From Haliotis rubra (lineage: Eukaryota), in NCBI RefSeq assembly GCF_003918875.1, contig NW_025766936.1:558001-622000 (forward strand): 64,000 nt of DNA. Reading direction: 5' to 3'. Made by a program: the position numbers and the translations under genes. Position 1 is the stretch's first letter. Each line of letters begins with the position of its first letter. The notes beneath the pieces are model-generated. The model was not told the DNA's origin. It was given only the letters and a program-made list of their open reading frames with translations, and ran no database searches. Positions 11,445 through 64,000 of the stretch are shown here, piece by piece.

Positions 11445-12686
11445 TCAGAAATATGATATCTTCAGGAAAAAACCCACTGTTGTAATGATGAACAGCATGA
11501 AAAACAAAAAGAAGAAAATCCTGCTCATCATTCTGCTGACTCGCTTCCAGGTCATTGGTGGTGGATTCCATGATTCATTCGACTTCTTGTCCAGTGACAG
11601 GATCTCCGTACCAACAGCAGGAGTGCCAAAGATGCATCTCTCCCAGGACCTTGTCATACGTCCCATCCACGACGGAACAGGTCTGATGGCTGAGTCCCGA
11701 TGGAACACTTGCACAATCCAGATGGTCAGGAACACGTAGAGAGAGCTCATGATAAACAGGCCAACAAGAAAGATAGTAAACATAGGTAACGAGTCACCAT
11801 TCTGTGGCAGCATTCCAGTGACGAAGGACAGGGATACAGTGAAAGACAGCAACACTGTGATGGCAAAGGACACCTTCTCGCCAGACTCCACAGGAATGAG
11901 GAACACCACCACATTCACTAATCCAAGCACCAAGACAGGCAGGAGAGTTGTCAGTATCGCCAAAGATGGCTTTCTCTTCAGGCTCATTTTGTAGTATACC
12001 CAAGGAAAATATTTGCCACTGTTTCCAAAGACAACTCTTGATGCAGATGTGTTAGTGATATCCCACTGGCTGTTGGAGTTATACAAACTTAATCCTATAG
12101 AGTTATTTGTCGATCTTAAATCAACTTCTTTCAGACCATTTCTCCAATCAAACGTCTCATAAGTACATTCCTGTTCATCCAAAGGAAAGTTGGTAACATC
12201 CATTTGGCAGAAAGTCTTGAAGGTATCGCCAGGTGACCAAGTCACAATTCCTTCGGCGGTCACTTTCATAACCCCAAAGTCGAGACCCAGAGGCTCAGCA
12301 TCAACCACCTGGTTCCAAACTGTGATGTAAGGTCTCCAAACCTTCCCATAGTCAGGATTTATTTCACTGATTCCTCCATATTCACTGGCGTTCCAGGTTA
12401 GAAACTCATCTTTCCAGGAAACTAAGAAAAACCCGTTAGCTGTCACTGTCTGAGTAACGTCATCAAAATTAGATATGCTGAGAAGGTAAAGTTCCAATGA
12501 GACCGTGATAGAGTCACTGCTGTTCTTGACTGGTCTGACATTTGGGTTGTTGTTTCTGATGATGTCATTGTGTAGGCGAAGTACATGGTGGTCGTCCTGA
12601 CCTCTAGTTGCCCCCAGAAACAACAGTAGACACAGTCCACAGGTCACTCCCTTAAGGTGTCGCACCCCTAGCCCCAAAAAATACAT
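11445..12686 (-). CDS. Divergent nAChR-like Cys-loop ligand-gated ion channel subunit, copy 1 (413 aa, no intron in CDS)
   Basis: Signal peptide, NVRPV, WKDEFLTWN, VWRP, Cys-loop CQMDVTNFPLDEQEC (C-x13-C), pre-M1 KRKP, M1, GEK-M2 (VSFAITVLLSFTV), M3, short loop, M4. No loop C CC. 4-codon deletion in the signal peptide relative to paralogs. Confidence 0.95.
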   Translation of the reverse strand: MYFLGLGVRHLKGVTCGLCLLLFLGATRGQDDHHVLRLHNDIIRNNNPNVRPVKNSSDSITVSLELYLLSISNFDDVTQTVTANGFFLVSWKDEFLTWNASEYGGISEINPDYGKVWRPYITVWNQVVDAEPLGLDFGVMKVTAEGIVTWSPGDTFKTFCQMDVTNFPLDEQECTYETFDWRNGLKEVDLRSTNNSIGLSLYNSNSQWDITNTSASRVVFGNSGKYFPWVYYKMSLKRKPSLAILTTLLPVLVLGLVNVVVFLIPVESGEKVSFAITVLLSFTVSLSFVTGMLPQNGDSLPMFTIFLVGLFIMSSLYVFLTIWIVQVFHRDSAIRPVPSWMGRMTRSWERCIFGTPAVGTEILSLDKKSNESWNPPPMTWKRVSRMMSRIFFFLFFMLFIITTVGFFLKISYF

Positions 12687-13614
12687 CCTCTGCCTTGTAC
12701 TTCAACAGCAATGTGCGTATTCCGATATGCTTTGAGGCAGTAGTGCGCAGTTAACCAAGCACCACCTCACGGTGACGACACAATTAAGGTCTATATCGTT
12801 TTTAGTGTACTGATCATATTGCGAAATGTGATTCATTAACACATACAAAGAATAGCAAACAGAAACCTTTCAGTGATACATTAATGCATTCATGCCTGCA
12901 GGCTATATAGTAATTGAAACGGACAAAAACCGTTTAGAAAATGTAAACGTTACAATAAAAGCATTATTTATTGACGACAATCAATGTAATTGTACCCGTG
13001 AGCTCTCCTGCCTACATCTCTCCACAATAGTCTGTATAATGTCACTTTTTAGAGTTAGAGTTGTCTGACATAACAATACAATATAGGCAGCAAAACACTT
13101 TCCATAATCATAAACCATTCCTGTTAAAAGAAACATTTGTACTATGCCGACCCACCAATGATTCGATCACGATTCCAATAAAAGGTATTTCAAACTGTTC
13201 CCTTCTTCTCAAGAATCCTTACTTCACTGCTTCCGTTTTCTTATGGGTAAATAGTTCTTAATTTCTCGCTTTCTCGACTCTGTCACCATGGGGTAGCATG
13301 TTGACCTATGATGGCAATAGTGAAATGTTCTTAATTACTGATTTATTTGTTTTAAAAATGTACGCTTATGAGCTTTCAATGTAATTTCCAAAATCAACTT
13401 GATCAAAAGGAGTTATAAAAAAATGTTTGCAATAATTTTTCATAAAGGATTCCATTCCTTTTGTCCAAAGATTAATAATGCTCACAGAAGTCTAATATGT
13501 AACTTTAAAGTGATTAAATCTGACGGTATTTTAGGGAGCGTGTGTATGTGTAACGTTTGTCTGCATGATATACATAATTTCCAACGCTCACACATTTAGC
13601 CTAAAAATAGAATG

Positions 13615-16560
13615 GTAGTCACGCCACACTGTCAACCAAGTCATCAAGTAAGACCACGCCACGCTGTCAACCAAGTCATCAAGTATCTCCACGAAACAGT
13701 TATCAAACATGACCACGTCAAATTATCAAAATATTAAGAGGTAAAACAACGCCGTATCGTCAGCGAAAATATAAAGCAAAAACACTATCAACCTAGTCAT
13801 TACGCATGACCATGCCACACTATCAGCAAAGCCATCAATCCTGACCACCACCACGTCATCAAGCATGACCACATGGCACTGTCAACTATGTCATACAGAA
13901 TGACCACACAACACTATAAACACTATAAAGTCATCAAACATAACCACATTATACTTTCAACCAAGTTAGCAAGCCTGGCCAAGCCACACTATCAACCATG
14001 TCACAGAGAATGACCATCAAACAAATCAGCAAGCATGACGATGCCACACTATGAACCAAGTCATCAAGCATGACCACACATCAACAACGCTATCAAACAT
14101 TATCAACCATATCATCTAGCATGGCCATGCTAAAGTATCGTAACACGTAACACGATCAATTAACTTATCAAGCATGACCACATCACACTATCAACGAGGT
14201 CATCAAGCATGACCACACTATGAACCAAGTTCTCTAGCGTGACCACACCACACTATCAAAGAGGTCATCAAGCATGACCACACTATCAACCAAGTTATCT
14301 AGCGTGACCACACTACACTATCAACGAGGTCATCAAGCATGACCACACTATCAACCAAGTTATCTAGCGTGACCACACCACACTATCAACGAGGTCATCA
14401 AGCATGACCACACTATCAACCAAGTTATCTAGCGTGACCACACCACACTATCAACGAGGTCATCAAGCATGACCACACTATCAACCAAGTTATCTAGCGT
14501 GACCACACCACACTATCAACGAGGTCATCAAGAATGACCATAATATCAACCACGTTATCTAACGTGACCACACAACACTATCAACGAGGTCATCAAGCAT
14601 GACCACACTATCAACCAAGTTATCTAACGTGACCACACCACACTATCAACGAGGTCATCAAGCATGACAACACTATCAACCAAGTTATCTAACGTGACCA
14701 CACCACACTATCAACGAGGTCATCAAGCATGACCACACTATCAACCAAGTTATCTAGCGTGACCACACCACACTATCAACGAGGTCATCAAGCATGACCA
14801 CACTATCAACCAAGTTATCTAGCGTGACCACACCACACTATCAACCAAGTTATCTAACGTGACCACACCACACTATCAACGAGGTCATCAAGCATGACCA
14901 CACTATCAACCAAGTTATCTAGCGTGACCACACCACACTATCAACGAGGTCATCAAGCATGACCACACTATCAACCAAGTTATCTAACGTGACCACACCA
15001 CACTATCAACGAGGTCATTAAGCATGACTACAATATCAACCAAGTAATCTAGCGTGACCACACTACACTATCAACGAGGTCATCAAGCATGACCACACTA
15101 TCAACCAAGTCATCTAGCGTGACCACACTACACTATCAACGAGGTCATCAAGCATGACCACACTATCAACCAAGTTATCTAGCGTGACCACACCACACTA
15201 TCAACGAGGTTATCAAGCATGACTGCACTATCAACCAAGTTATCTAGCGTGACCACACCACACTATCAACGAGGTCATCAAGCATGACCACACTATCAAC
15301 CAAGTTATCTAACGTGACCACACCACACTATCAACGAGGTCATCAAGCATGACTACAATATCAACCAAGTTATCTAGCGTGACCACACTACACTATCAAC
15401 GAGGTCATCAAGCATGACCACACTATCAACCAAAGCATTATCTATCTAGCGTGACCACACCACACTATCAACGAGGTCATCAAGCATGACCACACTATCA
15501 ACCAAGTTATCTGGCGTGACCACACCACACTATCAACGAGGTCATCAAGCATAACCACACTATCAACCAAGTTATCTAACGTGACCACACCACACTATCA
15601 ACGAGGTCATCAAGCATGACCACACTATCAACCAAGTTATCTAGCGTGACCACACAACACTATCAACGAGGTCATCAAGCATGACCACACTATCAACCAA
15701 GTTATCTAGCGTGACCACACCACACTATCAACGAGGTCATCAAGCATAACCACACTATCAACCAAGTTATCTAACGTGACCACACAACACTATCAACGAG
15801 GTCATCAAGAATGACCACACTATCAACCAAGTTATCTAACGTGACCACACCACACTATCAACGAGGTCATCAAGCATGACCACACTATCAACCAAGTTAT
15901 CTAGCGTGACCACACTACACTATTAACGAGGTCATCAAGCATGACCACACTATCAACCAAGTTATCTAACGTGACCACACCACACTATCAACGAGGTCAT
16001 CAAGCATGACCACACTATCAACCAAGTTATCTAGCGTGACCACACCACACTATCAACGAGGTCATCAAGCATGACCACACTATCAACCAAGTTATCTAGC
16101 GTGACCACACCACACTATCAACGAAGTCATCAAGCATGACCACACTATCAACCAAGTTATCTAGCGTGACCACACCACACTATCAACGAGGTCATCAAGC
16201 ATGACCACACTATCAACCAAGTTATCTAGCGTGACCACACCACACTATCAACGAGGTCATCAAGCATAACCACACTATCAACCAAGTTATCTAGCGTGAC
16301 CACACCACACTATCAACGAGGTCATCAAGCATGACCACACTATCAACCAAGTTATCTAGCGTGACCACACCACACTATCAACGAGGTCATCAAGCATGAC
16401 TACACCGCGCTATCAAGCATGACCATGAAACACTATCAATCAAGTTATCAAGCATGACCACGCCATATTGTCAACGAAGTCATCAAGCATGACCACGCCA
16501 TATTGTCAACGAAGTCATCAAGCATGACAACGCCACACGTCAACCAATCATTCAAGCAGG
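13615..16560. repeat. 35-bp satellite array upstream of copy 1; core (~14165-16400) is a 65-bp dimer (35+30 bp), ~34 copies
   Basis: Unit gaggtcatcaagcatgaccacactatcaac-caagttatctagcgtgaccacaccacactatcaac, with degenerate 35-mers at both edges. Confidence 0.95.
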
Positions 16561-17857
16561 ACCACCCGATCCTTGAAGTAAGTGCCAGTCAGTGAGGAGA
16601 TGTGAAACCAAAAGGTCGAGGTATGGGAACTAATCTCTGAAGCCGATGTTATGTCGCTCTCCATGAAGTGTAAAAAGACGTTTTAAAAATTCTCTCCATT
16701 GATCCAGAGATGACATTCAATATCGATAATAATATTCTTTCACCTCTGTGTGAGCATGTTTTGTTTTTGTTTTCACATCTGGTGGATAAATGAGGTGAGA
16801 ATCCTAACTTATCTTGACGTTGTTCAAAACAACCAGGACATCTTCAGACCTGAATCTGTCTTGGCAACGCTTCATATCGTTTGGTCAACCAAAATAGTTA
16901 AATGCCCATGAAAACATATCATATCACCAAACCTGACTAAGATGTTGCCAGTAAACTCGTATATCAGGCATTTCTAAGAATGGTTTCAGCTTTATCAAAA
17001 CCAACATCCATACACAATTGTAAGAAAGTCAGATTTTAGACTAAAATTCTTGGAAACAAAACCCGAATTCCACAACTAAGTGAAACCCAGTCAGTTGATG
17101 TCAATGACCTAATACTGAGACTGTTGTGGCGCGCCACTAGTACTTACAATATAAAATGCAAGCAATCACAATTAAAATTTAAACTAATTGCAAGATTTTA
17201 TGGATTATGACTTGCTTCATGATGATTGTAGCGATGTCAGATTCAGTGGAGATATGTATGCGCGGCGACAGTGACGACTCACGACGGCGGGCATCCGTGC
17301 ACTATGTCATCACACACAACAGGTGATCGTAGCCTACAAACAGGCCGCCATACATACACGTGCACATTTCAATAAAGAGGATTTATTGTGTAATGAATAC
17401 ATTAAACTGGTGTACGTTCTGACCATGGATACGTCTGTACAACTGTTTCTCTACCGAATCGAGACTCCCATACCACGACAGGCACAGGGATTCGTACATA
17501 GACGTGTTTTTTTCTGTTACTGAACCACTATCAACATATGATAACATTTGCCAAAAGGACACATATGACCATGTCATAATTGTAATGTGATCCTACTTCC
17601 GTAGTAAGAACTACGTCACCCACACTTAAAACTAACATCTATAAACAAACATAATAACATTTCTGGCTGAATACGTGGACAGACATACCACCGTCACAAT
17701 GAGAACTAGGCGACTGTATTTCACATCATAGGCAAACAATAGAACTGTCAATAAAGTCATTGAATGATGTTAACAATATCCACATACAATGTAAACATGG
17801 GATTCTCCAGCCTGTATAGAATGTGGGCATCACCGTATCGAATGCAAATAATTCCCT

Positions 17858-18150: not shown

Positions 18151-18195
18151 TATGTCAGACAGATTATATTTACAATAATCATGGTTTCCGTAATA

Positions 18196-19452
18196 TCAGA
18201 AATATGATATCTTCAGGAAAAACACCACTGTTGTAATGATGAACAGCATGAAAAACAAAAAGAAGAAAATCCTGCTCATCATTCTGCTGACTCGCTTCCA
18301 GGTCATTGGTGGTGGATTCCATGATTCATTCGACTTCTTGTCCAGTGACAGGATCTCCGTACTTCCAACAGCAGGAGTGCCAAAGATGCATCTCTCCCAG
18401 GACCTTGTCATACGTCCCATCCACGACGGAACAGGTTTGATGGCTGCGTCCCGATGGAACACTTGAACGGTCCAGATGGTCAGGAACACGTAGAGAGAGC
18501 TCATGATAAACAGGCCAACAAGAAAGATAGTAAACACAGGTATACTGTCAGCGTTCTGTGGCAGCAGTCCAGTGACGAAGGATAGGGATACAGTGAAAGA
18601 TAGCAACACCGTGATGGCAAAGGACACCTTCTCTCCAGACTCCACAGGAATGAGGAACACCACCACATTCACTAATCCCAGCACCAGGATAGGCAGGAGA
18701 GTTGTCAGTATCGCCAAAGATGGCTTTCTCTTCAGGCTCATTTTGTAGTGTACCCAAGGATAATAGCTGCCACTGTGTCCAAGGACAAGTCTTGATGCAG
18801 ATGTGTTGGTGATATCCCATTGGCTGTTGGAGTCAAACAAATTTAATCCTATAGAGTTATTAGTCGGTCTTAAATCAACTTCTTTCAGACTAGTTCTCCA
18901 ATCAAACGTCTTATAGGTACACTCCTGTTCATCCAAAGGAAAGTTGGTAACATCCATTTGGCAGAAAGTCTTGAAGGTATCGCCAGGTGACCAAGTCACA
19001 ATTCCTTCGGCGGTCACTTTAATGACACCAAAGTCGAGTCCCAGAGGTTCAGCGTCAACCACCTGGTTTCGAATTGCAATATAAGGTCTCCAAACCTTCC
19101 CATAGTCAGGATTTATTTCATTGATACCTCCATACTCGCTGACGTTCCAGGTTAGAAACTCATCTTTCCAGGAAACTAAGAAAAACCCATTGGCTGTCAC
19201 TGTCTGAGTAACTTCATCAAAATCAGATATGCTGAGAAGGTGAAGTTCCAATGAGACCGTGATAGAGTCACTGCTGTTCTTGACTGGTCTGACATTTGGG
19301 TTGTTGTTTCTGATGATGTCATTGTGTAGTCGAAGTACATGGTGGTCGTCCTGACCTCTAGATGTCCCCAGGAACAACAGTAGACACAGTCCACATGTCA
19401 CTCCCTTGAGGTGACCCACCCCTCGCTCTGTGAACAGCCCCAACACGTACAT
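18196..19452 (-). CDS. Divergent nAChR-like Cys-loop receptor subunit, copy 2 (418 aa)
   Basis: Full-length paralog of copy 1 with the same Cys-loop, GEK-M2 and 4 TM. Loop C RLVLGHSGSYYPW. One-codon insertion (GSTE) in the M3-M4 loop. Confidence 0.95.
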   Translation of the reverse strand: MYVLGLFTERGVGHLKGVTCGLCLLLFLGTSRGQDDHHVLRLHNDIIRNNNPNVRPVKNSSDSITVSLELHLLSISDFDEVTQTVTANGFFLVSWKDEFLTWNVSEYGGINEINPDYGKVWRPYIAIRNQVVDAEPLGLDFGVIKVTAEGIVTWSPGDTFKTFCQMDVTNFPLDEQECTYKTFDWRTSLKEVDLRPTNNSIGLNLFDSNSQWDITNTSASRLVLGHSGSYYPWVHYKMSLKRKPSLAILTTLLPILVLGLVNVVVFLIPVESGEKVSFAITVLLSFTVSLSFVTGLLPQNADSIPVFTIFLVGLFIMSSLYVFLTIWTVQVFHRDAAIKPVPSWMGRMTRSWERCIFGTPAVGSTEILSLDKKSNESWNPPPMTWKRVSRMMSRIFFFLFFMLFIITTVVFFLKISYF

Positions 19453-21357: not shown

Positions 21358-22310
21358 TCAGAGATTTGATATCTTCAGAAATCCACACACTGTTGCAATG
21401 ATGAACAGCATGAAAACCAAAAAGAAAAATATCCTGCTCATCATTCTGCTGACTCGCTTCCAGGTCATTGGTGGTGGATTGCACGATTCATTCGACTTCT
21501 TGTCCAGTGACAGGATCTCCGTACCAACAGCAGGAGTGCCAAAGATGCATCTCTCCCAGGACCTTGTCAAACGTCCCATCCACGACAGAACAGATCTGAT
21601 GGTTTCGTCCCGATGGAACACTTGCACGATCCAGATGGTCAGGAACACGTAGAGAGAGCTCATGATAAACAGGCCAACAAGAAAGATAGTAAACACAGGT
21701 ATACTGTCACCGTTCTGTGGCAGCAGTCCAGTGACGAAGGATAGGGATACAGTGAAAGACAGCAACACCGTGATGGCAAAGGACACCTTCTCACCAGAAT
21801 CCACAGGAATGAGGAACACCACCACATTCACTAACCCCAGCATCAGGACAGGCAGGAGAGTTGTCAGTATCGCTAAAGATGGCTTTCTCTTCAGGCTCAG
21901 CTCGTAGTATACAAAAGGAATATATATGCCACTGGTTTCAAAGACAACCCTTGACGCAGATGTTTTGATGATATCCCATTGGCTGTTGGCGTTGAACAAA
22001 TTTAATCCTATAGAGTTATTAGTCGGCCTTAAATCAACTTCTTTCAGACCATTTCTCCAGTCAAACGTCTTATATATACACTCCTGTTCATCAAGAAAGG
22101 AAAGTTGGTAACATCCATTTGGCAGAAAATCTTGAAGGTATCGCCAGGTGCCCATGTTACAATTCCTTCGGCGGTCACTTTAATGACCCCAAAGTCGAGA
22201 CCCAGAGGCTCAGCATCAACCACCTGGTTCCGGATTGTGATGTAAGGTCTCCAAACATTCCCATAGTCAGGATGTATTTCACTGATTCCTCCATATTCAC
22301 TGGCGTTCCA
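21358..22310 (-). pseudogene. nAChR-like copy 3, pseudogene (5' third deleted, frameshift in the Cys-loop)
   Basis: Homology to paralogs stops at the codons for WNASEY (22310); signal peptide and N-terminus are absent. A +2 insertion at ~22093 (catcaagaaagg vs catccaaagg) shifts the frame, so the ORF-track N-terminus MGTWRYLQ... is out of frame. Confidence 0.92.
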
Positions 22311-22463
22311 ACTTTTTTAATTTTAGGACATAAATTCTGCAAACAAATTACAGAGTTGGTCTGACGTCTTGATTATGATCAGTGTTTCATTGAGTATTTT
22401 ATGTTTATTAGTTTTCGAGTTAGATTCCAATTCATCAGTCCGCTTTTTAGCCAAACGGACTAT
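22309..22463. mobile_element. Right arm only of the TA-MITE seen complete at 31574-31956
   Basis: ttttaggacataaattctgcaaacaaattacagagttgg...agccaaacggactata matches 31811-31956 and is fused directly to the truncated copy 3. Confidence 0.85.
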
Positions 22464-22779: not shown

Positions 22780-24115
22780 AGGAATGACCACGCCACACGG
22801 TAAACCAAGTCATCAATCATGACCATGCCGAAAGATATACCAAGTCATCAATCATGACCACGCAACGCTATCAACCAAGTCATCAATCATGACCACGCAA
22901 CGCTATCAACCAAGTCATCAAGCCTGACCATGCCACACTATCAACCAAGTCATCAACCCTGATCACGCCAAGTCATCCAAGTCATCAAGCCTGACCATGC
23001 CACACTATCAACCAAGTCATCAAGCCTGACCATGCCACACTATCAACCAAGTCATCAAGACTGACCATGCCACACTATCAACCAAGTCATCAAGCCTGAC
23101 CATGCCACACAATCGATCAAGTCATATAGCCTGACCATGCCACACAATCGATCAAGCCATCAAGCCTGACCATGCCACACTATCGACCAAGTCATATAGC
23201 ATGACCATGCCACACTATCAGTCAAGTCATCAAGCCTGACCATGCCACACTATCGACCAAGTCATATAGCATGACCACGCCACACTATCAACCAAGTCAT
23301 CAAGCCTGACCATGCCACACTATCAACCAAGTCATCAAGCCTGACCATGCCACACTATCGACCAAGTCATATAGCATGACCATGCCACACTATCGACCAA
23401 GTCATATAGCATGACCATGCCACACTATCAACCAAGTCATCAAGCCTGACCATGCCACACTATCAACCAAGTCATATAGCATGACCATGCCACACTATCA
23501 ACCAAGTCATATAGCATGACCATGCCACACTATCAACCAAGTCATATAGCATGACCATGCCACACTATCAACCAAGTCATATAGCATGACAATGCCACAC
23601 TATCGACCAAGTCATCAAGCCTGACCATGCCACACTATCAACCAAGTCATATAGCATGACCTTGCCACACTATCAACCAAGTCATATAGCATTACAATGC
23701 CACACTATCAACTAAGTCATCAAGCCTGACCATGCCACGCTATCGACCAAGTCATATAGCATGACAATGCCACACTATCGATCAAGTCATCAAGCCTGAC
23801 CATGCCACGCCATCAACCAACTCATATAGCATGACAATGCCACACTATCGACCAAGTCATCAAGCCTGACCATGCCACGCTATCAACCAAGTCATATAGC
23901 ATGACCATGCCACACTATCGACCAAGTCATATAGCATGACAATGCCACACTATCGACAAGTCATCAAGCCTGACCACGCCACACTATTTACCAAGTCATA
24001 TAGCATGACCATGCCACACTATCAACCAAGTCATCAAGCCTGACCACACCACACTATCGACCAAGTCATCAAGCCTGACCATGCCACACTATCGACCAAT
24101 CATTCAAGCAGGACC
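22780..24115. repeat. 35-bp satellite array upstream of copy 3 (~38 copies)
   Basis: Unit caagtcat(caagcc/atagca)tgaccatgccacactatc(a/g)ac. Confidence 0.95.
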
Positions 24116-24363
24116 ACCAGATCCCTGCAGTAAGTGCCAGTCAGTGAGGACATGTGCAACCAAAAGGTCAGTGTACGGGAACGTATCGTCTTGTCATCTT
24201 GACATGCTGACAGTGATGTGTATTCGGCTTATTTTTCTGTCTACAATAAAATCAATGGAATGACTAAACCTGACCTTTGTTGTTGAAACAGTGATTGAAA
24301 ATCTTTGATGAAAGCAAATTATTTTTGTCCAATGAAATTTGAACAATATGGACGTGCTCTTAG

Positions 24364-28901: not shown

Positions 28902-29291
28902 CCATCAACATATGATAACGTTTGTCAAAGGGACATACATAACCATGCCATACTTGTAATGTTATACCACAGTAGAAATACCTATCTCATGCACACTTAA
29001 AACTATCATCAACAAACACATATAATAACATAATGACTGACAGGTCAATAGGTAAACAACAGAACTGTCAACAGTCATTGAATGTTGTCAGCAACACATA
29101 CTGACATTGTACAAATATTATTCTCCTATCTGTACAACTGTGGGCATCGCCGTATCTGGTGCGAGTCACCTATATATTCCCCGCTAAGTGCCATTCAAAT
29201 CATTAAGTATTATACTAGAGTATTCTCTCTGTGTCCTTAGGTTGCTAATGTCAGACAGATTATATTTACAGAAATCATCGTTTTCGTTACA

Positions 29292-30545
29292 TTAGAAATG
29301 TGACATCTTCAGAAACACACACACTGTTGCTATGATGAACAGCATGAAAAACAAAAAGAAAAATATCCTGCTCATCATTCTGCTGACTCGCTTCCAGGTC
29401 ACTGGTGGTGGATTGCATGATTCATTCGACTTCTTGTCCAGTGACAGGATCTCCGTACCAACAGCAGGAGTGCCAAGGATGCATCTCTCCCAGGACCTTG
29501 TCATACGTCCAATCCACGACGGAACAGGTTTGATGGCTGCGTCCCGATGGAACACTTGCACGATCCAGATGGTCAGGAACACGTAGAGAGAGCTCATAAT
29601 AAACATGCCAACAAGAAAGATAGTAAACATAGGTAACGAGTCACCATTCTGTGGCAGCAGTCCAGTGACGAAGGACAGGGATACAGTGAAAGACAGCAAC
29701 ACCGTGATGGCAAAGGACAGCTTCTCGCCAGACTCCACAGGAATGAGGAACACCACCACATTCACTAATCCCAGCACCAGGACAGGCAGGAGGGTTGTCA
29801 GAATCGCCAAAGATGGCTTTCTCTTCAGGCTCATTTTGTAGTATACAAAAGGAATATATCTGCCACTGGTTTCAAAGACAACCCTTGACGCAGATGTGTT
29901 GATGATATCCCACTGACCGTTAGAATTAAATAAATCTAATCCTATTGAGTTATTAGTCGGTCTTAAATCAACTTCTTTCAGACCATTTCTCCAGTCAAAC
30001 GTCTTATATATACACTCCTGTTCATCCAAAGGAAAGTTGGTAACATCCATTTGGCAGAAAGTCTTGAAGGTATCGCCAGGTGCCCATGTTACAATTCCTT
30101 CGGCGGTAACTTTAATGACCCCAAAGTCGAGTCCCAGGGGCTCAACGTCAACCACCTGGTTCCGGATTGTGATGTAAGGTCTCCAAACCTTCCCATAGTC
30201 AGGATTTATTTCACTGATTCCTCCATACTCACTGGCGTTCCAGGTTAGAAACTCATCTTTCCAGGAAACTAAGAAAAACCCGTTAGCTGTCACTGTTTGA
30301 GTAACTTCATCAAAATCAGACATGCTGAGAAGGTAAAATTCTAAAGAGACCGTGATAGAGTCACTGCTGTTCTTGACTGGTCTGACATTTTGGTTGTTGT
30401 TTGTGATGATGTCATTGTGTAGTCGAAGTACATGGTGGTCGTCCTGACCTCTAGATGCCCCCAGGAACAACAGCAGACACAGTCCACATGTCACTACCTT
30501 GAGATGACGCAGCCCTAGCTCTGTGAACAGCCCCAACACGTACAT
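29292..30545 (-). CDS. Divergent nAChR-like Cys-loop receptor subunit, copy 4 (417 aa)
   Basis: Full-length paralog. Loop C RVVFETSGRYIPF; GEKL. Confidence 0.95.
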   Translation of the reverse strand: MYVLGLFTELGLRHLKVVTCGLCLLLFLGASRGQDDHHVLRLHNDIITNNNQNVRPVKNSSDSITVSLEFYLLSMSDFDEVTQTVTANGFFLVSWKDEFLTWNASEYGGISEINPDYGKVWRPYITIRNQVVDVEPLGLDFGVIKVTAEGIVTWAPGDTFKTFCQMDVTNFPLDEQECIYKTFDWRNGLKEVDLRPTNNSIGLDLFNSNGQWDIINTSASRVVFETSGRYIPFVYYKMSLKRKPSLAILTTLLPVLVLGLVNVVVFLIPVESGEKLSFAITVLLSFTVSLSFVTGLLPQNGDSLPMFTIFLVGMFIMSSLYVFLTIWIVQVFHRDAAIKPVPSWIGRMTRSWERCILGTPAVGTEILSLDKKSNESCNPPPVTWKRVSRMMSRIFFFLFFMLFIIATVCVFLKMSHF

Positions 30546-44703: not shown

Positions 44704-45957
44704 TTAGAAACATGATATCTTCAGGAAAACACACACTGTTGCTATGATGAACAGCATGAAAAACAAAAAGAAAAAAATCCTGCTCATCATTCTGCTGACT
44801 CGCTTCCAGGTCATTGGTGGTGGATTCCATGATTCATTCGACTTCTTGTCCAGTGACAGGATCTCCGTACCAACAGCAGGAGTGCCAAAGATGCATCTCT
44901 CCCAGGACCTTGCCATACGTCCCATCCACGACGGAACAGGTCTGATGGCTGCGTCTCGATGGAACACTTGCACGATCCAGATGGTCAGGAACACGTACAG
45001 AGAGCTCATGCTAAACAGGCCAACAAGAAAGATAGTAAACACAGGTATACTGTCAGCGTTCTGTGGCAGCAGTCCAGTGACGAAGGATAGGGAAACAGTG
45101 AAAGACAGCAACACTGTGATGGCAAAGGACAGCTTCTCGCCAGACTCCACAGGAATGAGGAACACCACCACATTCACTAATCCCAGCACCAGGACAGGCA
45201 GGAGGGTTGTCAGTATCACTAAAGATGGCTTTCTCTTCAGGCTCATTTTGTAGTATACCCAAGGAAAATATATGCCACTGTTTCCAAGGACAAGTCTTGA
45301 AGCACATGTGTTTGTGATATCCCATTGGCTGTTGGCGTTGAACAAATCTATTCCTATAGAGTTATTGATCGGTCTTAAATCAACTTCTTTCAGATCACTT
45401 CCCCAAGCAAACGTCTCATAAGTACATTCCTGTTCATCCAAAGGAAAGTTGGTAACATCCATTTGGCAGAAAGTCTTGAAGGTATCGCCAGGTGACCAAG
45501 TCACAATTCCTTGGGCGGTCACTTTCATAACCCCAAAGTCGAGACCCAGAGGCTCAGCATCAACCACCTGATTCCAAATTGTGATGTAAGGTCTCCAAAC
45601 CTTCCCATAGTCAGGACCTATTTCACTGATATCCCCATACTCGCTGGCGTTCCAGGTTAGAAATTCATCTTTCCAGGAAACTAAGAAAAACCCGTTAGCT
45701 GTCACTGTCTGAGTAACTTCATCAAAATTGGACATGCTGAGAAGGTGAAATTCTAAAGAGACCGTGATTGTGTCACTGCTGTTCTTGACTGGTCTGACAT
45801 TTGGGTTGTTGTTTCTGATGAAGTCATTGTGTAGTCGAAGGACATGGTGGTCATCCTGACCTCTAGATGTCCCCAGGAACAACAGTAGACACAGCCCACA
45901 TGTCACTACCTTGAAGTGATGCATCCCTCGCTCTATGAACAGCCCCAACAAATACAT
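44704..45957 (-). CDS. Divergent nAChR-like Cys-loop receptor subunit, copy 5 (417 aa)
   Basis: Full-length paralog. Loop B YETFAWGSD; loop C CASRLVLGNSGIYFPW; GEKL. Confidence 0.95.
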   Translation of the reverse strand: MYLLGLFIERGMHHFKVVTCGLCLLLFLGTSRGQDDHHVLRLHNDFIRNNNPNVRPVKNSSDTITVSLEFHLLSMSNFDEVTQTVTANGFFLVSWKDEFLTWNASEYGDISEIGPDYGKVWRPYITIWNQVVDAEPLGLDFGVMKVTAQGIVTWSPGDTFKTFCQMDVTNFPLDEQECTYETFAWGSDLKEVDLRPINNSIGIDLFNANSQWDITNTCASRLVLGNSGIYFPWVYYKMSLKRKPSLVILTTLLPVLVLGLVNVVVFLIPVESGEKLSFAITVLLSFTVSLSFVTGLLPQNADSIPVFTIFLVGLFSMSSLYVFLTIWIVQVFHRDAAIRPVPSWMGRMARSWERCIFGTPAVGTEILSLDKKSNESWNPPPMTWKRVSRMMSRIFFFLFFMLFIIATVCVFLKISCF

Positions 45958-47344: not shown

Positions 47345-50300
47345 AAGTCATCAAGCATTACCAGTCAAACTATCAAACAAGTCATCAAGCATGACTACGC
47401 CGCCCTGTCAACTAAGTCATCAAGCGTGACCACACCGCCCTGTCAACTAAGTCATCAAGCGTGACCACACCGCCCTGTCAACTAAGTCATCAAGCGTGAC
47501 CACACCGCCCTGTCAACTAAGTCATCAAACGTGACCACACCGCCCTGTCAACTAAGTCATCAAGCGTGACCACACCGCCCTGTCAACTAAGTCATCAAGC
47601 GTGACCACACCGCGCTGTCAACTAAGTCATCAAGCAGGGCCACACCGCACTGTCAACTAAGTCATCAAGCAAGGCCACACCGCGCTGTCAACTAAGTCAT
47701 CAAGCAAGACCACACCGCGCTGTCGACTAAGTCATCAAGCGTGACCACACCTCGCTATCAACTAAGTCATCAAGCAAGACCACACCGCACTGTCAACTAA
47801 GTCATCAAGCAGGGCCACACCGCACTGTCAACTAAGTCATCAAGCAAGACCACATCGCACTGTCAACTAAGTCATCAACAGGACCACACCGCACTGTCAA
47901 CTTAGTCATCAAGCGTGACCACACCTCGCTATCAACTAAGTCATCAAGCAAGACCACACAGCGCTGTCAACTAAGTCATCAAGTGTGACCACACCTCGCT
48001 ATCAACTAAGTCATCCAGCAGGACCACACCTCGCTGTCAACTAAGTCATCAAGCAAGACCACACTTTGCTGTCAACTAAGTCATCCAGCAGGACCACACC
48101 TCGCTGTCAACTAAGTCATCAAGCAAGACCACACTTTGCTGTCAACTAAGTCATCCAGCAGGACCACACCGCGCTGTCAACTAAGTCATCAAGCAAGACC
48201 ACACCGCGCTGTCAACTAAGTCATCAAGTAAGAGACCACACTTTGCTGTCAACTAAGCCATCCAGCAGGACCACACCGCGCTGTCAACTAAGTCATCAAG
48301 CGTGACCACACCGCACTGTCAACTGAGTCATCAAGCAAGACCACACCGCGCTGTCAACTGAGTCATCAACCAAGACCACACCGCACTGTCAACTGAGTCA
48401 TCAAGCAAGACCACACCTCGTTGTCAACTGAGTCATCAAGCAAGACCACACCGCGCTGTCAACTGAGTCATCAAGCAAGACCACACCGCACTGTCAACTG
48501 AGTCATCAAGCAGGACCACACCGCACTGTCAACTAAGTCATCAAGCGTGACCACACCTCGCTATCAACTAAGTCATCAAGCGTGACCACACCTCGCTGTC
48601 AACTAAGTCATCAAGCAGGACCACACTTTGCTGTCAACTAAGTCATCAAGCAGGACCACACAGCGCTGTCAACTAAGTCATCACGGAAGACCACACTTTG
48701 CTGTCAACTTAGTCATCCAGCAGGACCACACTTTGCTGTCAACTAAGTCATCCAGCAGGACCACATTTCGCTGTCAACTAAGTCATCAAGCAAGACCACA
48801 TTTTGCTGTCATCTAAGTCATCCAGCAGGACCACACCTCGCTGTCAACTAAGTCATCAAGCAAGACCACACTTTGCTGTCAACTGAGTCATCCAGCAGGA
48901 CCACACCTCGCTGTCAACTAAGTCATCAAGCAAGACCACACTTTGCTGTCAACTAAGTCATCCAGCAGGACCACACCGCGCTGTCAACTAAGTCATCAAG
49001 TAAGAGACCACACTTTGTTGTCAACTAAGTCATCCAGCAGGACCACACCGCGCTGTCAACTAAGTCATCAAGCGTGACCACACCGCACTGTCAACTGAGT
49101 CATCAAGCAAGACCACACCGCACTGTCAACTAAGTCATCCAGCAGGACCACACCGCGCTGTCAACTAAGTCATCAAGCGTGACCACACCGCACTGTCAAC
49201 TGAGTCATCAAGCAAGACCACACCGCGCTGTCAACTGAGTCATCAAGCAAGACCACACCGCACTGTCAACTGAGTCATCAAGCAAGGCCACACCGCGCTG
49301 TCAACTGAGTCATCAAGCAAGACCACACCGCACTGTCAACTGAGTCATCAAGCAAGACCACACCACACTGTCAACTAAGTCATCAAGCAGGACCACACCG
49401 CACTGTCAACTGAGTCATCAGGCAAGACCACACCGCACTGTCAACTGAGTCATCAAGCAAGACCACACCGCACTGTCAACTGAGTCATCAAGCAAGAACA
49501 CACCGCGCTGTCAACTGAGTCATCAAGCAAGACCACACCGCACTGTCAACTGAGTCATCAAGCAAGACCACACTTTGCTGTCAACTAAGTCATCAAGGAA
49601 GGCCACACTTTGCTGTCAACTTAGTCATCCAGCAGGACCACACTTTGCTGTCAACTAAGTCATCCAGCAAGACCACATTTTGCTGTCAACTAAGTCATCC
49701 AGCAGGACCACACCTCGCTGTCAACTAAGTCATCAAGCAAGACCACACTTTGCTGTCAACTAAGTCATCCAGCAGGACCACACCTCGCTGTCAACTAAGT
49801 CATCAAGCAAGACCACACTTTGCTGTCAACTAAGTCATCCAGCAGGACCACACCGCCCTGTCAACTAAGTCATCAACCAAGACCACACCGCGCTATCAAC
49901 TAAGTCATCAAGTAAGAGACCACACTTTGTTGTCAACTAAGTCATACAGCAGGACCACACCGTGCTGTCAACTAAGTCATCAAGCGTGACCACACCGCAC
50001 TGTCAACTGAGTCATCAAGCAAGACCACACCGCGCTGTCAACTGAGTCATCAAGCAAGACCACACCACACTGTCAACTGAGTCATCAAGCAAGACCACAC
50101 CGCGCTGTCAACTGAGTCATCAAGCAAGACCACACCTCGCTGTCAACTGAGTCATCAAGCAAGACCACACCTCGCTGTCAACTGAGTCATCAAGCAGGAC
50201 CACACCGCACTGTCAACTGAGTCATCAGGCAAGACCACACCGCACTGTCAACTGAGTCATCAAGCAAGACCACACCGCGCTGTCAACTGAGTCATCAAGC

Positions 50301-50595
50301 AAGACCACACCGCGCTGTCAACTGAGTCATCAAGCAAGACCACACCACACTGTCAACCGAGTCATCAACCAAGACCACACCGCACTGTCAACTGAGTCAT
50401 CAAGCGTGTCCACACCTCGCTATCAACTTTGTCATCAAGCAAGACCACACCGCACTGTCAACTAAGTCATCAAGCGTTACCACACCTCGCTATCAACTAA
50501 GTCATCAAGCAGAACCACACCACGCTGTCAACTATGTCATCAAGCAGGACCACACCTCGCTGTCAACTATGTATAAGTCATTTAGCAGGACCACC
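47345..50595. repeat. 35-bp satellite array upstream of copy 5 (~90 copies)
   Basis: Variant unit ct(a/g)agtcatcaagca(a/g)gaccacaccgc(a/g)ctgtcaa, with the same terminal sequence as the other arrays. Confidence 0.95.
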
Positions 50596-52979: not shown

Positions 52980-54233
52980 TCAGAAATAAGATATCTTCAG
53001 AAAACCACACACTGTCGCTATGATGAACAGCATGAAAAACAAAAAGAAGAAAATCCTGCTCATCATTGTGCTGACTCGCTTCCAGGTCATTGGTGGTGGA
53101 TTCCATGATTCATTCGACTTCTTGTCCAGTGACAGGATCACCGTACCAACAGCAGGAGTGCCAAAGATGCATCTCTCCCAGGACCTTGTCATACGTCCCA
53201 TCCACGATGGAACAGGTCTGATGGCTTCGTCTCGATGGAACACTTGCACAATCCAGATGGTCAGGAACACGTAGAGAGAGCTCATAATAAACAGGCCAAC
53301 AAGAAAGATAGTAAACATAGGTAACGAGTCACCATTCTGTGGCAGCAGTCCAGTGACGAAGGATAGGGATACAGTGAAAGATAGCAACACTGTGATGGCA
53401 AAGGACACCTTCTCGCCAGACTCCACAGGAATGAGGAACACCACCACATTCACTAATCCCAGCACCAGGACAGGCAGGAGAGTTGTCAGAATCGCCAAAG
53501 ATGGCTTTCTCTTCAGGCTCATTTTGTAGTATACAAACGGAATACATCTGCCACTGTTTTCAAGGACAATTCTTGAAGCAGATGTGTTAGTGATATCCCA
53601 CTGGCCGTTAGAGTTAAATAAATCTAATCCTATAGAGTTATTAATCGGTCTTAAATCAACTTCTTTCAGACCATTTTTCCAATCAGACGTCATATATATA
53701 CACTCTTGTTCATCCAAAGGAAAGTTGGTAACATCCATTTGGCAGAAAGTCTTGAAGGTATCGCCAGGTGCCCAAGTCACAGTTCCTTGGGCGGTAACTT
53801 TAATGACACCAAAGTCGAGTCCTAAAGGTTTAACATTAACCACTTGGTTGCGAATTGTGATGTAAGGTCTCCAAACCTTCCCATAGTCAGGATTTATTTC
53901 ACTGACTCCTCCATACTCGCTGGCGTTCCAGGTTAGAAATTCATCTTTCCAGGAAACTAAGAAAAACCCGTTAGCTGTCACTGTTTGAGTAACTTCATCA
54001 AAGTCGGACATGCTGAGAAGGTGAAGTTCTAAAGAGATCGTGATAGTGTCACTGCTGTTCTTGACTGGTCTGACATTTGGGTTGTTGTTTCTGATGAGGT
54101 CATTGTGTAGTCGAAGTACATGGTGGTCGTCCTGACCTCTACTTGCCCCCAGGAACAACAGTAGACACAGTCCACATGTCACTACCTTGAGTTTACGCAC
54201 CCCTCGCTCTATGAACAGCCCCAACACATACAT
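52980..54233 (-). CDS. Divergent nAChR-like Cys-loop receptor subunit, copy 6 (417 aa)
   Basis: Full-length paralog. Loop B YMTSDWKNG; loop C RIVLENSGRCIPF. Confidence 0.95.
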   Translation of the reverse strand: MYVLGLFIERGVRKLKVVTCGLCLLLFLGASRGQDDHHVLRLHNDLIRNNNPNVRPVKNSSDTITISLELHLLSMSDFDEVTQTVTANGFFLVSWKDEFLTWNASEYGGVSEINPDYGKVWRPYITIRNQVVNVKPLGLDFGVIKVTAQGTVTWAPGDTFKTFCQMDVTNFPLDEQECIYMTSDWKNGLKEVDLRPINNSIGLDLFNSNGQWDITNTSASRIVLENSGRCIPFVYYKMSLKRKPSLAILTTLLPVLVLGLVNVVVFLIPVESGEKVSFAITVLLSFTVSLSFVTGLLPQNGDSLPMFTIFLVGLFIMSSLYVFLTIWIVQVFHRDEAIRPVPSWMGRMTRSWERCIFGTPAVGTVILSLDKKSNESWNPPPMTWKRVSTMMSRIFFFLFFMLFIIATVCGFLKISYF

Positions 54234-62254: not shown

Positions 62255-63878
62255 AAGTATATCCAGGGCAGAACAATAACTAGCGTCCTCCCTTGTATAG
62301 TTCCTGAAACTTCCTGAGTAAACTTGATTCCAAGGCATCAAACTATAGTAACTTCTACACCCGTGCTTACTTTAGATAGCTATACATTCCTGACGAAAAA
62401 GAGTTGTTGAAACAATGTTACAAGAAAGCGGACAAGAAAACATCATAATGCCTTTATTACAATTTCAAACAAATTAAAAGTAGATTAAGACAGTTTTCCT
62501 TTAATATTTGAGTTCATATGAACAATGCTGGTTTCAGTTCATTCCCCATTTTACACCATTCCCAATTTTACTACTATGTCTATATATCATGTACACGGAA
62601 AGTGTAAACAGTCCATCAGGCCACATTGTCTCCAAGATCATGCATGCAACGAACTGAGAAGTAGGCACCTTACATGATTGCAGTAATCCGTCTGACTAAA
62701 GGCAGGCATGTCAGTTTTATAAAAGCGGACAAGTAAGGTCTTATCGATAATTTGAACATAAAGAAAACCAAATATGACATGTTGCAGACAATAGCTTAAA
62801 ACGAATACAGAAATGTCCTTACTTTGTACTTCATTTGCTCGTAGAATTTCAGAAAGCTTTTACAGAATGGTATTGTTAATTATAAATTGAATTTTATCAA
62901 AAATACAACAATTGCAAATTGTCATTGAGAATGTTATATGAACACAGACACATTCACAAGGAACAATATTTTGCTGGCTGAAATCAGCTGTTGCAGGCAA
63001 GGCGCAAGTCATTCAGCATTCCACCACACGGACTGTTTCCTTGTCTCCCTCTGAATGTTGTGAAAAATTCTCTATCACGTTTTTGACTTTAGGAATTATA
63101 TTAAAAACGCTTAATAATTTCCTATACAATTAAACCCTCATATATGAATCCAGACGTTTCAAAGAAGCATCAGGTAAAGAACTCATACTGAATATTTATA
63201 GAAACAATGCAATACAGTGACAATATTATTTAACAGTTCTTACATTTCCGCATAACAAACGGTATTTTATAGTTAACTTTCACACTTTGATGATATAGAA
63301 CATCCTTGTGTTGGGATAGTTTAACCTGTATCCTCGTAGGGTTCCATACCGACGTTCACTGAATGGAATGTTCATCCAGAAATTTGTTTTGGCCAAGATC
63401 ACTCATACAATGTACACATAACGACAATACAAAATGATTTTATAGAACTCTCGAGGTGTATTCAGGACGATCCGGTACAGTGGTTTCCATCACCACTACC
63501 AGTAAAGCACACACATTACTTTACACTGTGTATATTGTACAGCACTGATACTGTTTAGCCAACTTGACGATAAATTCAAATATGTCAACATCAGCGCCAC
63601 ATGGGATCCGTGATATTATTGATCAGTGCGCTGACGTTGTTAATTGCGCAGAGTACTAGTGTGGGCAAACATTTTGTTAAATGTATTTCACAATGTGTTT
63701 TATCATGTGGAGCTAAACCAAAGGTATAGAATGACGCACATGATCATTTCCATTATGCCATCAGGGTACCTGGTTATAAACTGTTATGGTGTAGCGGTAA
63801 GCAGTTTCACCGTATCACTCTGCACTGTCGTGATTCCTATTGGTGGATGCATATTTCTGTTGAAGTACAAGACAGAGA

Positions 63879-64000
63879 ATGTATGTGCTGAGGCTGTTCA
63901 CAGAGCGAGGGGTGCGCCACCTCAATGTAGTGACATGTGGACTGTGTCTACTGTTGTTTCTGAAGGCGAGCAGAGGTCAGGACGATCACCATGTACTTCG
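63879..64000 (+). CDS. nAChR-like copy 7, N-terminus (inverted orientation, runs off the window)
   Basis: ATG at 63879 translates MYVLRLFTERGVRHLNVVTCGLCLLLFLKASRGQDDHHVL(R), matching the paralog signal peptides. Same leader tgttgaagtacaag.cagag.ATG. Intactness cannot be seen. Confidence 0.85.
   Translation, partial: MYVLRLFTERGVRHLNVVTCGLCLLLFLKASRGQDDHHVL

What the first reader, a model, noticed from the sequence alone, without database searches (positions are those of the whole stretch)
11445..64000. Tandem array of intronless, acetylcholine-site-degenerate Cys-loop channels: candidate gastropod chemosensory (chemotactile-like) receptor system
Seen: at least 7 closely related paralogs in 53 kb. 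The five intact copies are single ORFs with signal peptide, Cys-loop, 4 TM and a very short M3-M4 loop, and all six visible loop C regions lack the vicinal CC. Established: canonical nAChR genes are intron-rich and their alpha subunits carry the CC and an aromatic cage. Octopus and squid chemotactile receptors are intronless, tandemly arrayed nAChR derivatives that lost ACh sensing, and intronless nAChR-like expansions are reported in bivalves. Inference: this is a young, actively birth-and-death evolving receptor family in what looks like abalone. It may be a contact chemoreceptor set (tentacle or epipodium, foot, larval settlement cues) that evolved in parallel with cephalopod CRs. The expansion phenomenon is known in molluscs; this family's ligand and function are, as far as I know, not.
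Basis: partly seen in the sequence, partly recalled or inferred. Interest (0 to 1): 0.9.

Follow-up and report, generated by a model that had tools for sequence, protein, structure and literature searches.

The report
Abalone tandem array of CC-less nicotinic-like channels
This is part of a 117-kb cluster of about 13 near-identical single-exon genes in blacklip abalone for nicotinic-receptor-like cation channels that have lost the acetylcholine-binding residues; this kind of gene expansion is already known in molluscs, and a chemosensory role remains an untested idea.

Summary
The window (Haliotis rubra QXJH01000284.1:558001-622000) carries five intact minus-strand single-ORF Cys-loop channel genes of 413-418 aa. 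It also carries one pseudogene (codons 1-101 missing, 2-bp insertion in the Cys-loop) and the start of a seventh, plus-strand copy that is intact beyond the window.

The array spans about 117 kb with at least 12 open genes. All copies lack the loop C Cys-Cys. Only the loop B Trp of the aromatic box survives, while the cation-pore signature (-1' Glu, 9' Leu) is kept.

Overall dN/dS is 0.3-0.4. Replacements pile up in loops B and C (Fisher p 3e-9). Formal positive selection is only suggestive: ECD-only LRT p 0.04, with a recombination signal.

This fits the known molluscan intronless tandem nAChR expansion (Jiao 2019). A 2026 preprint already raises the ionotropic chemosensor idea for gastropods.

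The family is no closer to cephalopod chemotactile receptors (20-26% identity) than to human alpha7 (28%). Its nearest relatives are gastropod genes. RNA support is minimal and the tissue is unknown.

The scan's first readers noted similar arrays elsewhere in this genome.

Verdict: a real, functional-looking, lineage-specific receptor family and a new member of a known kind. The chemotactile reading is plausible but untested, and a beta-like accessory-subunit reading fits equally well.

The parts
11445..12686 (-). copy c1, intact 413-aa pLGIC subunit gene (pocket type Trp128/Glu181)
18196..19452 (-). copy c2, intact 418-aa gene (Arg/Lys pocket type)
21364..22313 (-). pseudogene f1: codons 1-101 and about 1.2 kb of upstream DNA deleted; 2-bp insertion in the Cys-loop near 22095; 93% DNA identity to c3
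29292..30545 (-). copy c3, intact 417-aa gene (Arg/Lys); reference copy for residue numbering, structure model and searches
44704..45957 (-). copy c4, intact 417-aa gene (Trp/Glu)
52980..54233 (-). copy c5, intact 417-aa gene (Arg/Met)
63879..64000 (+). first 40 codons of a seventh copy (P0009, 413 aa, complete in the contig), head-to-head with c5; belongs to the older subclade B
30546..30610 (-). about 65 nt directly upstream of the ATG, conserved in all five intact copies (5' UTR, core promoter or possible splice acceptor); the equivalent stretch precedes each copy
29205..29291 (-). about 90 nt after the stop codon, conserved in all five copies (3' UTR start)
13620..16565 (.). 65-nt (2 x about 35) minisatellite upstream of c1, related to the three arrays listed below; likely substrate for unequal crossing-over
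22785..24116 (.). 35-nt minisatellite upstream of f1
32286..36923 (.). 35-nt minisatellite (132 units) upstream of c3
47379..50569 (.). 35-nt minisatellite (91 units) upstream of c4

Best explanation
The window holds 7 of at least 13 copies of a Haliotis-specific tandem family of genes. Each copy has a single coding exon and encodes a roughly 415-aa pentameric ligand-gated channel subunit of alpha7-like nicotinic ancestry.

Shown here. The proteins keep what a cation channel needs: a hydrophobic N-terminal leader read as a signal peptide, the Cys-loop, four TM helices, -1' Glu and 9' Leu. They are non-alpha. The loop C Cys-Cys is gone, and the aromatic box is reduced to the loop B Trp (Y93 to Arg or Trp, Y188 to Phe or Leu, Y195 to Ile, Phe, Tyr or Leu, W55 to Phe).

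The family grew by tandem duplication, with gene conversion or unequal crossing-over between minisatellite-rich spacers. Scaffold and pore are under purifying selection: omega is about 0.09 at two thirds of sites. Amino-acid replacements concentrate in loops B and C, with single sites in loop F and M4.

Inferred. The genes encode functional cation-channel subunits that do not use acetylcholine as alpha-type subunits do. They assemble as homomers or intra-family heteromers, and the varied orthosteric loops give each paralogue a different ligand preference. The likely setting is an environment-facing, non-synaptic tissue; the very short intracellular loop argues against synaptic anchoring.

My odds. 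What it is: about 0.95. Non-cholinergic, ligand-diversified channels: about 0.55. Specifically peripheral chemosensory receptors: about 0.3.
For: - Domain architecture and fold.
- Pocket and pore residues from the alpha7 alignment and a 184-sequence alignment.
- Array extent and orientation.
- The family is a 100/99-supported Haliotis clade, with 1:1 H. rubra-H. asinina orthologues in subclade B and partly species-specific duplicates in subclade A.
- Pairwise dN/dS is 0.27-0.40 and dS is 0.14-0.19.
- By region, dN/dS is 1.30 in loop B, 1.76 in loop C, 0.22 in M1-M3 and 0 in the Cys-loop.
- Tree-based counts give N:S of 72:16 in loops B and C against 316:327 elsewhere, Fisher p 3e-9.
- M2a vs M1a gives LRT 20.9, p 3e-5, omega2 2.9. 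High-posterior sites are 181 (loop B), 204 (loop F), 222 and 229 (loop C) and 409 (M4).
- The M3-M4 segment is short, about 50 aa.
- Known precedent for intronless tandem nAChR expansions with diverse ligand-binding domains in molluscs.
Against: - There is no ligand, current or tissue evidence.
- RNA support is a 187-203-nt contig at depth about 3 in two small runs, and none for c1-c2.
- Positive selection weakens when the ECD is analysed on its own tree (LRT 6.5, p 0.04).
- A recombination signal is present (p 0.004), and recombination inflates such tests.
- The codon models are my own implementation, not PAML or HyPhy.
- Loop D is frozen (omega 0.08) while the principal-face loops vary. That is also the pattern expected of a beta-like subunit whose principal face binds nothing.
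Confidence: 0.55

Rival explanations
1. One reading: a contact chemoreceptor set (tentacles, epipodium, foot, larval settlement) that evolved in parallel with cephalopod chemotactile receptors. This is a narrower case of the best explanation, not exclusive of it.
For: The family shares gross features with CRs as described. The coding body is single-exon and nAChR-derived, the ACh residues are lost, the cation pore is kept, and the binding loops are variable. Copy number changes in a tandem birth-and-death pattern typical of chemoreceptor families. The intracellular loop is short.
Against: No sensory-tissue expression is shown, and RNA evidence is nearly nil. Most copies put Arg, Lys or Glu in the pocket, unlike the hydrophobic CR pocket. 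The family has no phylogenetic affinity to CRs. In bivalves the expanded nAChR genes are mostly linked to gill, embryonic stages, stress and infection, not sense organs.
Confidence: 0.3
2. Beta-like accessory subunits. They contribute only the complementary face (loops D, E, F) and the pore to cholinergic heteromers built around canonical Cys-Cys alpha subunits. Their unused principal-face loops B and C drift.
For: Variability sits on the principal face (loop B dN/dS 1.30, loop C 1.76). Loop D is nearly frozen (0.08) and loop E is constrained (0.29). An aromatic residue (Phe) is invariant at the W55 position. Omega above 1 is only marginal once recombination is partly controlled. Canonical CC-bearing subunits exist in Haliotis, for example P0044.
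Against: W55 is replaced by Phe and L109 by Lys on the complementary face. Twelve near-identical accessory genes kept open with 1:1 orthologues across species is unusual for synaptic subunits. The roughly 50-aa M3-M4 loop lacks the long cytoplasmic domain of synaptic subunits. Loop F site 204 is among the fastest sites.
Confidence: 0.25
3. Non-neuronal stress, immune or developmental channels, as proposed for the bivalve expansions (gill, embryo, infection-responsive), responding to an endogenous ligand.
For: Jiao 2019 reports gill-dominant, stress- and infection-responsive and pre-neural embryonic expression of expanded intron-poor nAChR genes. The very low signal in the available abalone RNA runs fits conditional or stage-restricted expression.
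Against: No abalone expression data are available here. Paralogue-specific diversification of the binding loops is not obviously needed for one endogenous ligand.
Confidence: 0.15
4. Functionless, decaying duplicates of a retrogene.
For: There is one clear pseudogene. P0019 has a C-terminal frameshift. Some H. asinina copies have lost the canonical ATG. Transcription evidence is near zero. Jiao 2019 finds more silent genes among intron-poor nAChRs.
Against: At least 11 full-length open ORFs exist. Omega is about 0.09 at two thirds of sites, and the Cys-loop and M2 are invariant. Orthologues are conserved between H. rubra and H. asinina.
Confidence: 0.05

Closest known systems
Intronless, tandemly arrayed nAChR expansions of molluscs (Jiao et al. 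2019, BMC Genomics 20:937, PMC6896357)
   Same: Single-exon coding bodies, tandem arrays of up to 12 genes, lineage-specific clustering of paralogues, alpha7-like ancestry, most members without the Cys-Cys pair or with incomplete ACh-binding residues, and occasional pseudogenes.
   Different: That study centred on bivalves and contains no Haliotis (the word occurs 0 times). This vetigastropod family, its roughly 117-kb array, the two pocket types and the loop B/C hypervariability were not described there.
Cephalopod chemotactile receptors (octopus CRT1, squid CRB1; van Giesen 2020, Allard 2023, Kang 2023, as summarised in PMC11526382 and bioRxiv 2025.03.03.641191)
   Same: nAChR-derived, intronless, no ACh site, cation channels, multi-copy, and binding-pocket residues evolve fastest.
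   Different: The origins are independent. c3 is 26% identical to CRT1 and 20% to CRB1, against 28% to human alpha7, and its nearest relatives are gastropod genes. Most copies carry charged pocket residues rather than the hydrophobic CR pocket. Sensory expression and ligands are unknown here.
Divergent and 'CR-like' nAChR clades of the MolluscaGenes survey (bioRxiv 2026.05.05.723003, PMC13174522)
   Same: Divergent molluscan nAChR clades, gastropod ones included, with substituted ligand-binding residues. The authors explicitly suggest a possible ionotropic chemosensory role.
   Different: That survey is transcriptome-based. I could not tell which of its 15 clades holds this family. It gives no genomic array structure or selection analysis for Haliotis.
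Human alpha7 nAChR (best solved-structure match)
   Same: Same fold over the ECD and M1-M4 (Z 32, TM about 0.8). Shared features are the loop B Trp, the Cys-loop, the GEK motif and 9' Leu.
   Different: No loop C Cys-Cys. Y93, Y188, Y195 and W55 are all substituted. The 20' Glu is replaced by Gly. The M3-M4 loop is about 50 aa instead of about 150.
Alvinella pompejana Alpo4 orphan Cys-loop receptor (eLife 2023, PMC10338036)
   Same: A lophotrochozoan nAChR-like receptor that does not behave as a classical ACh receptor; it is a structural match at Z 26.5 and 23% identity.
   Different: It is an annelid protein, and I did not read that paper beyond its title and abstract.

Membership tests
Cys-loop pentameric ligand-gated ion channels, nicotinic branch | Neur_chan_LBD plus Neur_chan_memb domains, and a 13-residue Cys-loop | tested here: met
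   Pfam E 3e-40 and 1e-14; C164-QMDVTNFPLDEQE-C178, invariant in all copies.
Cys-loop pentameric ligand-gated ion channels, nicotinic branch | Beta-sandwich ECD plus four TM helices, with nAChR subunits as best matches | tested here: met
   AF2 model pLDDT 83.8. Foldseek TM about 0.8 to muscle, alpha4beta2 and alpha7 nAChRs. VIA Z 32.1 to alpha7. phmmer E 1e-49 to alpha7.
Cys-loop pentameric ligand-gated ion channels, nicotinic branch | Cation-selective pore signature (-1' Glu in GEK, 9' Leu; no PAR motif) | tested here: met
   ESGEK and 9' Leu are invariant in the family and present in 179 and 181 of 184 relatives. Selectivity itself was not measured.
Alpha-type, ACh-binding nAChR subunits | Vicinal Cys-Cys at the tip of loop C | tested here: not met
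   Alpha7 FYECCKEPYPD aligns to VFETSGRYIPF. No CC in any copy, nor in 177 of 184 relatives.
Alpha-type, ACh-binding nAChR subunits | Aromatic box Y93, W149, Y188, Y195 (plus W55 on the complementary face) | tested here: not met
   Only W149 (c3 W185) is kept. Y93 is Arg or Trp, Y188 is Phe or Leu, Y195 is Ile, Phe, Tyr or Leu, and W55 is Phe.
Molluscan intronless tandem nAChR expansion (Jiao 2019) | Coding sequence without introns | tested here: met
   Uninterrupted ORFs of 1242-1257 nt cover signal peptide to M4. A 5' non-receptor exon is possible.
Molluscan intronless tandem nAChR expansion (Jiao 2019) | Tandem array with lineage-specific clustering of paralogues | tested here: met
   At least 12 open genes in about 117 kb, 11 of them on one strand. 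The Haliotis-only clade has 100/99 support.
Molluscan intronless tandem nAChR expansion (Jiao 2019) | Origin by retroposition of an intron-rich parent | not tested
   No parent gene, poly(A) remnant or target-site duplication was sought. The event would predate the Haliotis family.
Cephalopod chemotactile receptors (CR) | Membership of the cephalopod CR clade | tested here: inconclusive
   No CR sequences could be brought into a tree. Indirectly: 26% and 20% identity to CRT1 and CRB1 against 28% to alpha7; CRs are absent from the top 60 phmmer and top 50 Foldseek PDB hits; and the ten nearest non-family clusters I looked up are all gastropod. This points to non-membership.
Cephalopod chemotactile receptors (CR) | Hydrophobic orthosteric pocket that binds poorly soluble ligands | tested here: inconclusive
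   By alignment, pocket positions hold Arg or Trp (128), Lys, Glu, Met or Ile (181), Lys (145), and Phe and Trp. The pocket is mixed and charged, not clearly hydrophobic. No pentamer model or ligand test was done.
Cephalopod chemotactile receptors (CR) | Diversifying selection on pocket residues | tested here: inconclusive
   Whole-gene M2a vs M1a p 3e-5 with sites in loops B, F and C. ECD alone gives p 0.04, and there is a recombination signal at p 0.004.
Cephalopod chemotactile receptors (CR) | Enriched expression in peripheral sensory cells, and activation by environmental chemicals rather than ACh | not testable with these tools
   Only trace contigs in coded RNA runs.
Acetylcholine-binding proteins (AChBP) | Soluble ECD-only protein without a transmembrane domain | tested here: not met
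   Four TM helices are present. AChBPs match the ECD only, at Z 20-22.

The most novel reading that the evidence does not exclude
A vetigastropod recruited nAChR-derived channels as ionotropic receptors for environmental chemicals, independently of cephalopods. The family would have two pocket chemotypes: Arg128 with Lys, Met or Ile at 181, and Trp128 with Glu181. These would be tuned to different ligand classes, for example anionic or amino-acid-like cues versus cationic or hydrophobic cues. The receptors would sit in tentacle, epipodial or foot epithelium or in settling larvae. If so, nAChR-to-chemoreceptor conversion would be a recurrent molluscan route rather than a cephalopod peculiarity.
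Probability: 0.25. Interest if true: 0.8.

Novelty: new member of a known kind. Interest (0 to 1): 0.4.

Why it matters
If these channels prove to be gated by environmental chemicals, abalone would offer a second, independent case of nicotinic receptors turned into sensory receptors. Abalone is farmed and has a well-studied larval settlement behaviour, so the question is directly testable. The genes are single-exon, about 1.25 kb, and easy to clone and express. As it stands, the locus is a clean, well-bounded example of a phenomenon already described for molluscs. It gives a short list of paralogues and residues (128, 181, 204, 222, 229) for functional work. The genes are already in RefSeq as 'alpha-7-like', a name that is misleading for function.

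Tried and rejected
- **Tree with cephalopod CRs.** No CR sequence could be obtained as a tool reference. CRs were not among the word-index hits, the named nearest clusters, the top 60 PDB phmmer hits or the top 50 Foldseek hits. I used structural-alignment identities instead.
- **Expression.** Two run searches and one read-laying run gave only trace contigs. Sample identities are coded, so no tissue can be named.
- **Allard 2023 (PMC10228259).** The paper is not held. CR features were taken from a review and a later preprint.
- **Abalone literature.** A search linking abalone nAChR-like genes to settlement found nothing relevant.
- **Positive selection as a firm claim.** Rejected after the ECD-only refit and the recombination test.
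- **CC loss as a feature of this array.** Rejected, because it is clade-wide.
- **AChBP-like decoy.** Rejected, because a TMD is present.
- **Protein Atlas search.** It added nothing beyond nAChR-like clusters.
- **Representative search.** Its top hits are 700-1100-aa multi-stretch proteins, probably fused models of tandem genes. I left them out of the alignments.
Full report
**What is there**

The window has five intact minus-strand ORFs of 413-418 aa: 11445-12686, 18196-19452, 29292-30545, 44704-45957 and 52980-54233.

tblastn with copy c3 finds two more pieces:
- a broken copy at 21364-22313;
- the first 40 codons of a plus-strand copy at 63879-63998.

Each intact ORF carries Pfam Neur_chan_LBD and Neur_chan_memb. 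The five proteins are 89-92% identical.

The broken copy lacks codons 1-101. It also has a 2-bp insertion inside the Cys-loop near 22095, and is otherwise 93% identical in DNA to c3.

**Where it is and how big it is**

Homologues identify the organism as Haliotis. The same proteins are RefSeq models named 'neuronal acetylcholine receptor subunit alpha-7-like' in H. rubra.

Fetching neighbouring loci places the window at QXJH01000284.1:558001-622000. The array continues on both sides:
- two more same-strand copies lie below the window;
- the edge copy (P0009, 413 aa) is complete in the contig;
- four more genes lie beyond the window end, namely P0011, P0019, P0017 and a 410-aa gene only 44% identical to c3. 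P0019 has a C-terminal frameshift.

The far end is bounded by an SRCR/LDLa/trypsin/CUB gene. In all there are at least 12 open genes plus one pseudogene in about 117 kb.

The unit conserved in every copy is little more than the gene: about 65 nt before the ATG and about 90 nt after the stop. Related 35/65-nt minisatellites of 1.3-4.6 kb lie upstream of four copies. They are plausible substrates for unequal exchange.

**What the protein is**

The best solved-structure match is human alpha7 nAChR (E 1e-49).

An AlphaFold model (pLDDT 83.8) shows the ECD beta-sandwich, M1-M3, a roughly 50-residue M3-M4 segment and M4. It superposes on nAChR subunits at TM about 0.8 and Z up to 32.

Reading the alpha7 alignment and a 184-sequence alignment gives these pocket substitutions:

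| alpha7 residue | In this family |
|---|---|
| C190-C191 (loop C) | Thr/Asn/His and Ser/Gly |
| Y93 | Arg (c2, c3, c5) or Trp (c1, c4) |
| K145 | Lys, Glu or Met |
| W149 | retained, invariant |
| Y188 | Phe or Leu |
| Y195 | Ile, Phe or Tyr |
| W55 | Phe, invariant |

The pore keeps ESGEK (-1' Glu) and 9' Leu. These are therefore non-alpha subunits with a degenerate ACh site and a cation-type pore.

The CC loss is not special to this array. Only 7 of the 184 nearest relatives keep it.

**Evolution**

A maximum-likelihood tree puts all Haliotis members at or above 70% identity in one clade (100/99 support). Its sister is a 44-46% Haliotis group, followed by Gigantopelta and Patella.

- The window's five copies, the two copies below the window and four H. 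asinina genes form a young subclade with partly species-specific duplicates.
- The distal genes have 1:1 H. asinina orthologues.

Pairwise dS is 0.14-0.19 and dN/dS is 0.27-0.40, so the genes are constrained.

Constraint is very uneven:

| Region | dN/dS |
|---|---|
| Cys-loop | 0 |
| Loop D | 0.08 |
| M1-M3 | 0.22 |
| Loop B | 1.30 |
| Loop C | 1.76 |

Parsimony counts on a 10-gene tree give N:S of 72:16 in loops B and C against 316:327 elsewhere (Fisher p 3e-9).

My own ML implementation of M1a and M2a on 13 genes prefers M2a:
- LRT 20.9, p 3e-5;
- 3.9% of sites at omega 2.9;
- high-posterior sites 181, 204, 222, 229 and 409.

A PHI-like test shows recombination (p 0.004). With the ECD on its own tree the LRT falls to 6.5 (p 0.04).

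I therefore treat hypervariability of the binding loops as shown, and positive selection as suggestive only.

**Relation to cephalopod chemotactile receptors**

I could not obtain CR sequences for a tree. Structural alignment gives:

| Target | Z | Identity |
|---|---|---|
| Octopus CRT1 | 23.1 | 26% |
| Squid CRB1 | 24.0 | 20% |
| Human alpha7 | 32.1 | 28% |

The ten nearest non-family clusters I looked up are all gastropod: Littorina, Gigantopelta, Nucella, Batillaria, Patella and other Haliotis clusters.

The family is therefore a parallel derivative of the nicotinic stock, not a CR relative.

It shares several features with CRs as described: a single-exon body, loss of ACh residues, a cation pore and fast-evolving pocket loops. 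Its pocket positions, however, include Arg, Lys and Glu rather than a plainly hydrophobic set.

**Expression**

Only two small RNA runs held 5-6% of c3's sampled words.

Laid on c3, they give one 187-nt and one 203-nt contig at about 98% identity and depth about 3. A third run gives a paralogous 167-nt contig. The unique flanks are empty.

No RNA run held c1-c2. Sample identities are coded.

This is at most trace transcription in unknown tissues. It neither supports nor excludes a sensory role.

**What is already known**

Jiao et al. 2019 described intronless, tandemly arrayed, lineage-specific nAChR expansions across molluscs. They reported that most oyster members lack the Cys-Cys pair or complete ACh sites, and proposed diverse ligands and environmental roles. 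That paper contains no Haliotis.

The 2026 MolluscaGenes preprint reports divergent and 'CR-like' nAChR clades in gastropods. It explicitly raises an ionotropic chemosensory role.

First-reader notes of this scan list similar arrays on other contigs of the same genome.

**Interpretation**

The most likely reading is a set of functional, non-cholinergic or at least non-alpha cation-channel subunits whose orthosteric loops diversify between paralogues.

The chemotactile-like reading is a reasonable analogy at roughly 0.3.

The main rival is a beta-like accessory subunit. The principal-face loops vary while loop D is frozen, which is the pattern such a subunit would show.

A bivalve-type stress, immune or developmental role is also open. 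Decay is disfavoured by the strong constraint on scaffold and pore.

**Verdict**

This is a real and tidy locus, and a new member of a known kind. It is of moderate interest, mainly as an easily testable candidate for a second nAChR-to-sensory-receptor transition.

Noticed in passing
window 24638-26025 (-): Two overlapping ORFs lie between pseudogene f1 and copy c3. The 335-aa ORF hits reverse transcriptase RVT_1 (E 2e-32). This is a retrotransposon remnant inside the array.
   Followed up: partly
window 7557-8042 (-): A 161-aa ORF hits the Tc3-type transposase HTH domain (PF01498, E 3e-9). It is a Tc1/mariner fragment just below copy c1.
   Followed up: partly
window 26925-28370 and 38019-39663: A duplicated segment of about 1.1-1.4 kb at 92% identity. 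Each copy holds a near-identical 102/110-aa ORF beginning MAKTLIEAT... with no assigned function. It is probably a dispersed repeat.
   Followed up: no
window 28700-28901 and 31528-31700: Very high word depth in both the DNA run and the RNA runs, about 2e7 in the DNA run, with A-rich loose ends just past 28900. These look like high-copy SINE-like repeats flanking copy c3.
   Followed up: no
window 58014-62254; 39967-41525; 56585-57330; 232-1154: Large unrelated satellites with units of 120/235, 61, 62 and 47 nt. The 120-nt array fills most of the head-to-head spacer between c5 and the plus-strand copy.
   Followed up: no
c3 residues 128 and 181 in all copies (for example window 12140-12310 in c1): Trp128 always co-occurs with Glu181 (c1, c4, H. 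asinina P0006). Arg128 goes with Lys, Met, Ile, Asp or Ser. These two positions are equivalent to alpha7 Y93 and K145. This may reflect coupled pocket residues or a gene-conversion tract.
   Followed up: partly
L005:13432-14751 and L006:10001-15132 (H. asinina CM074530.1, about 1.31-1.38 Mb): Two H. asinina paralogues have lost the canonical ATG (Ile or Leu at codon 1). Their RefSeq models start further upstream, one through a 19-aa exon 3.8 kb away. This hints at a 5' exon or at incipient decay.
   Followed up: partly
L004:10001-11255 (contig 646.8-648.1 kb): P0019 (392 aa) has residues 353-417 in another reading frame. The C-terminal frameshift removes M4 from the annotated product.
   Followed up: partly
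c3 residues 409, 410, 416 (window 29295-29320 region): The extreme C-terminal end of M4 contains sites with the highest omega posteriors in the TMD partition (0.99, 0.79, 0.93). No reason for this was established.
   Followed up: no
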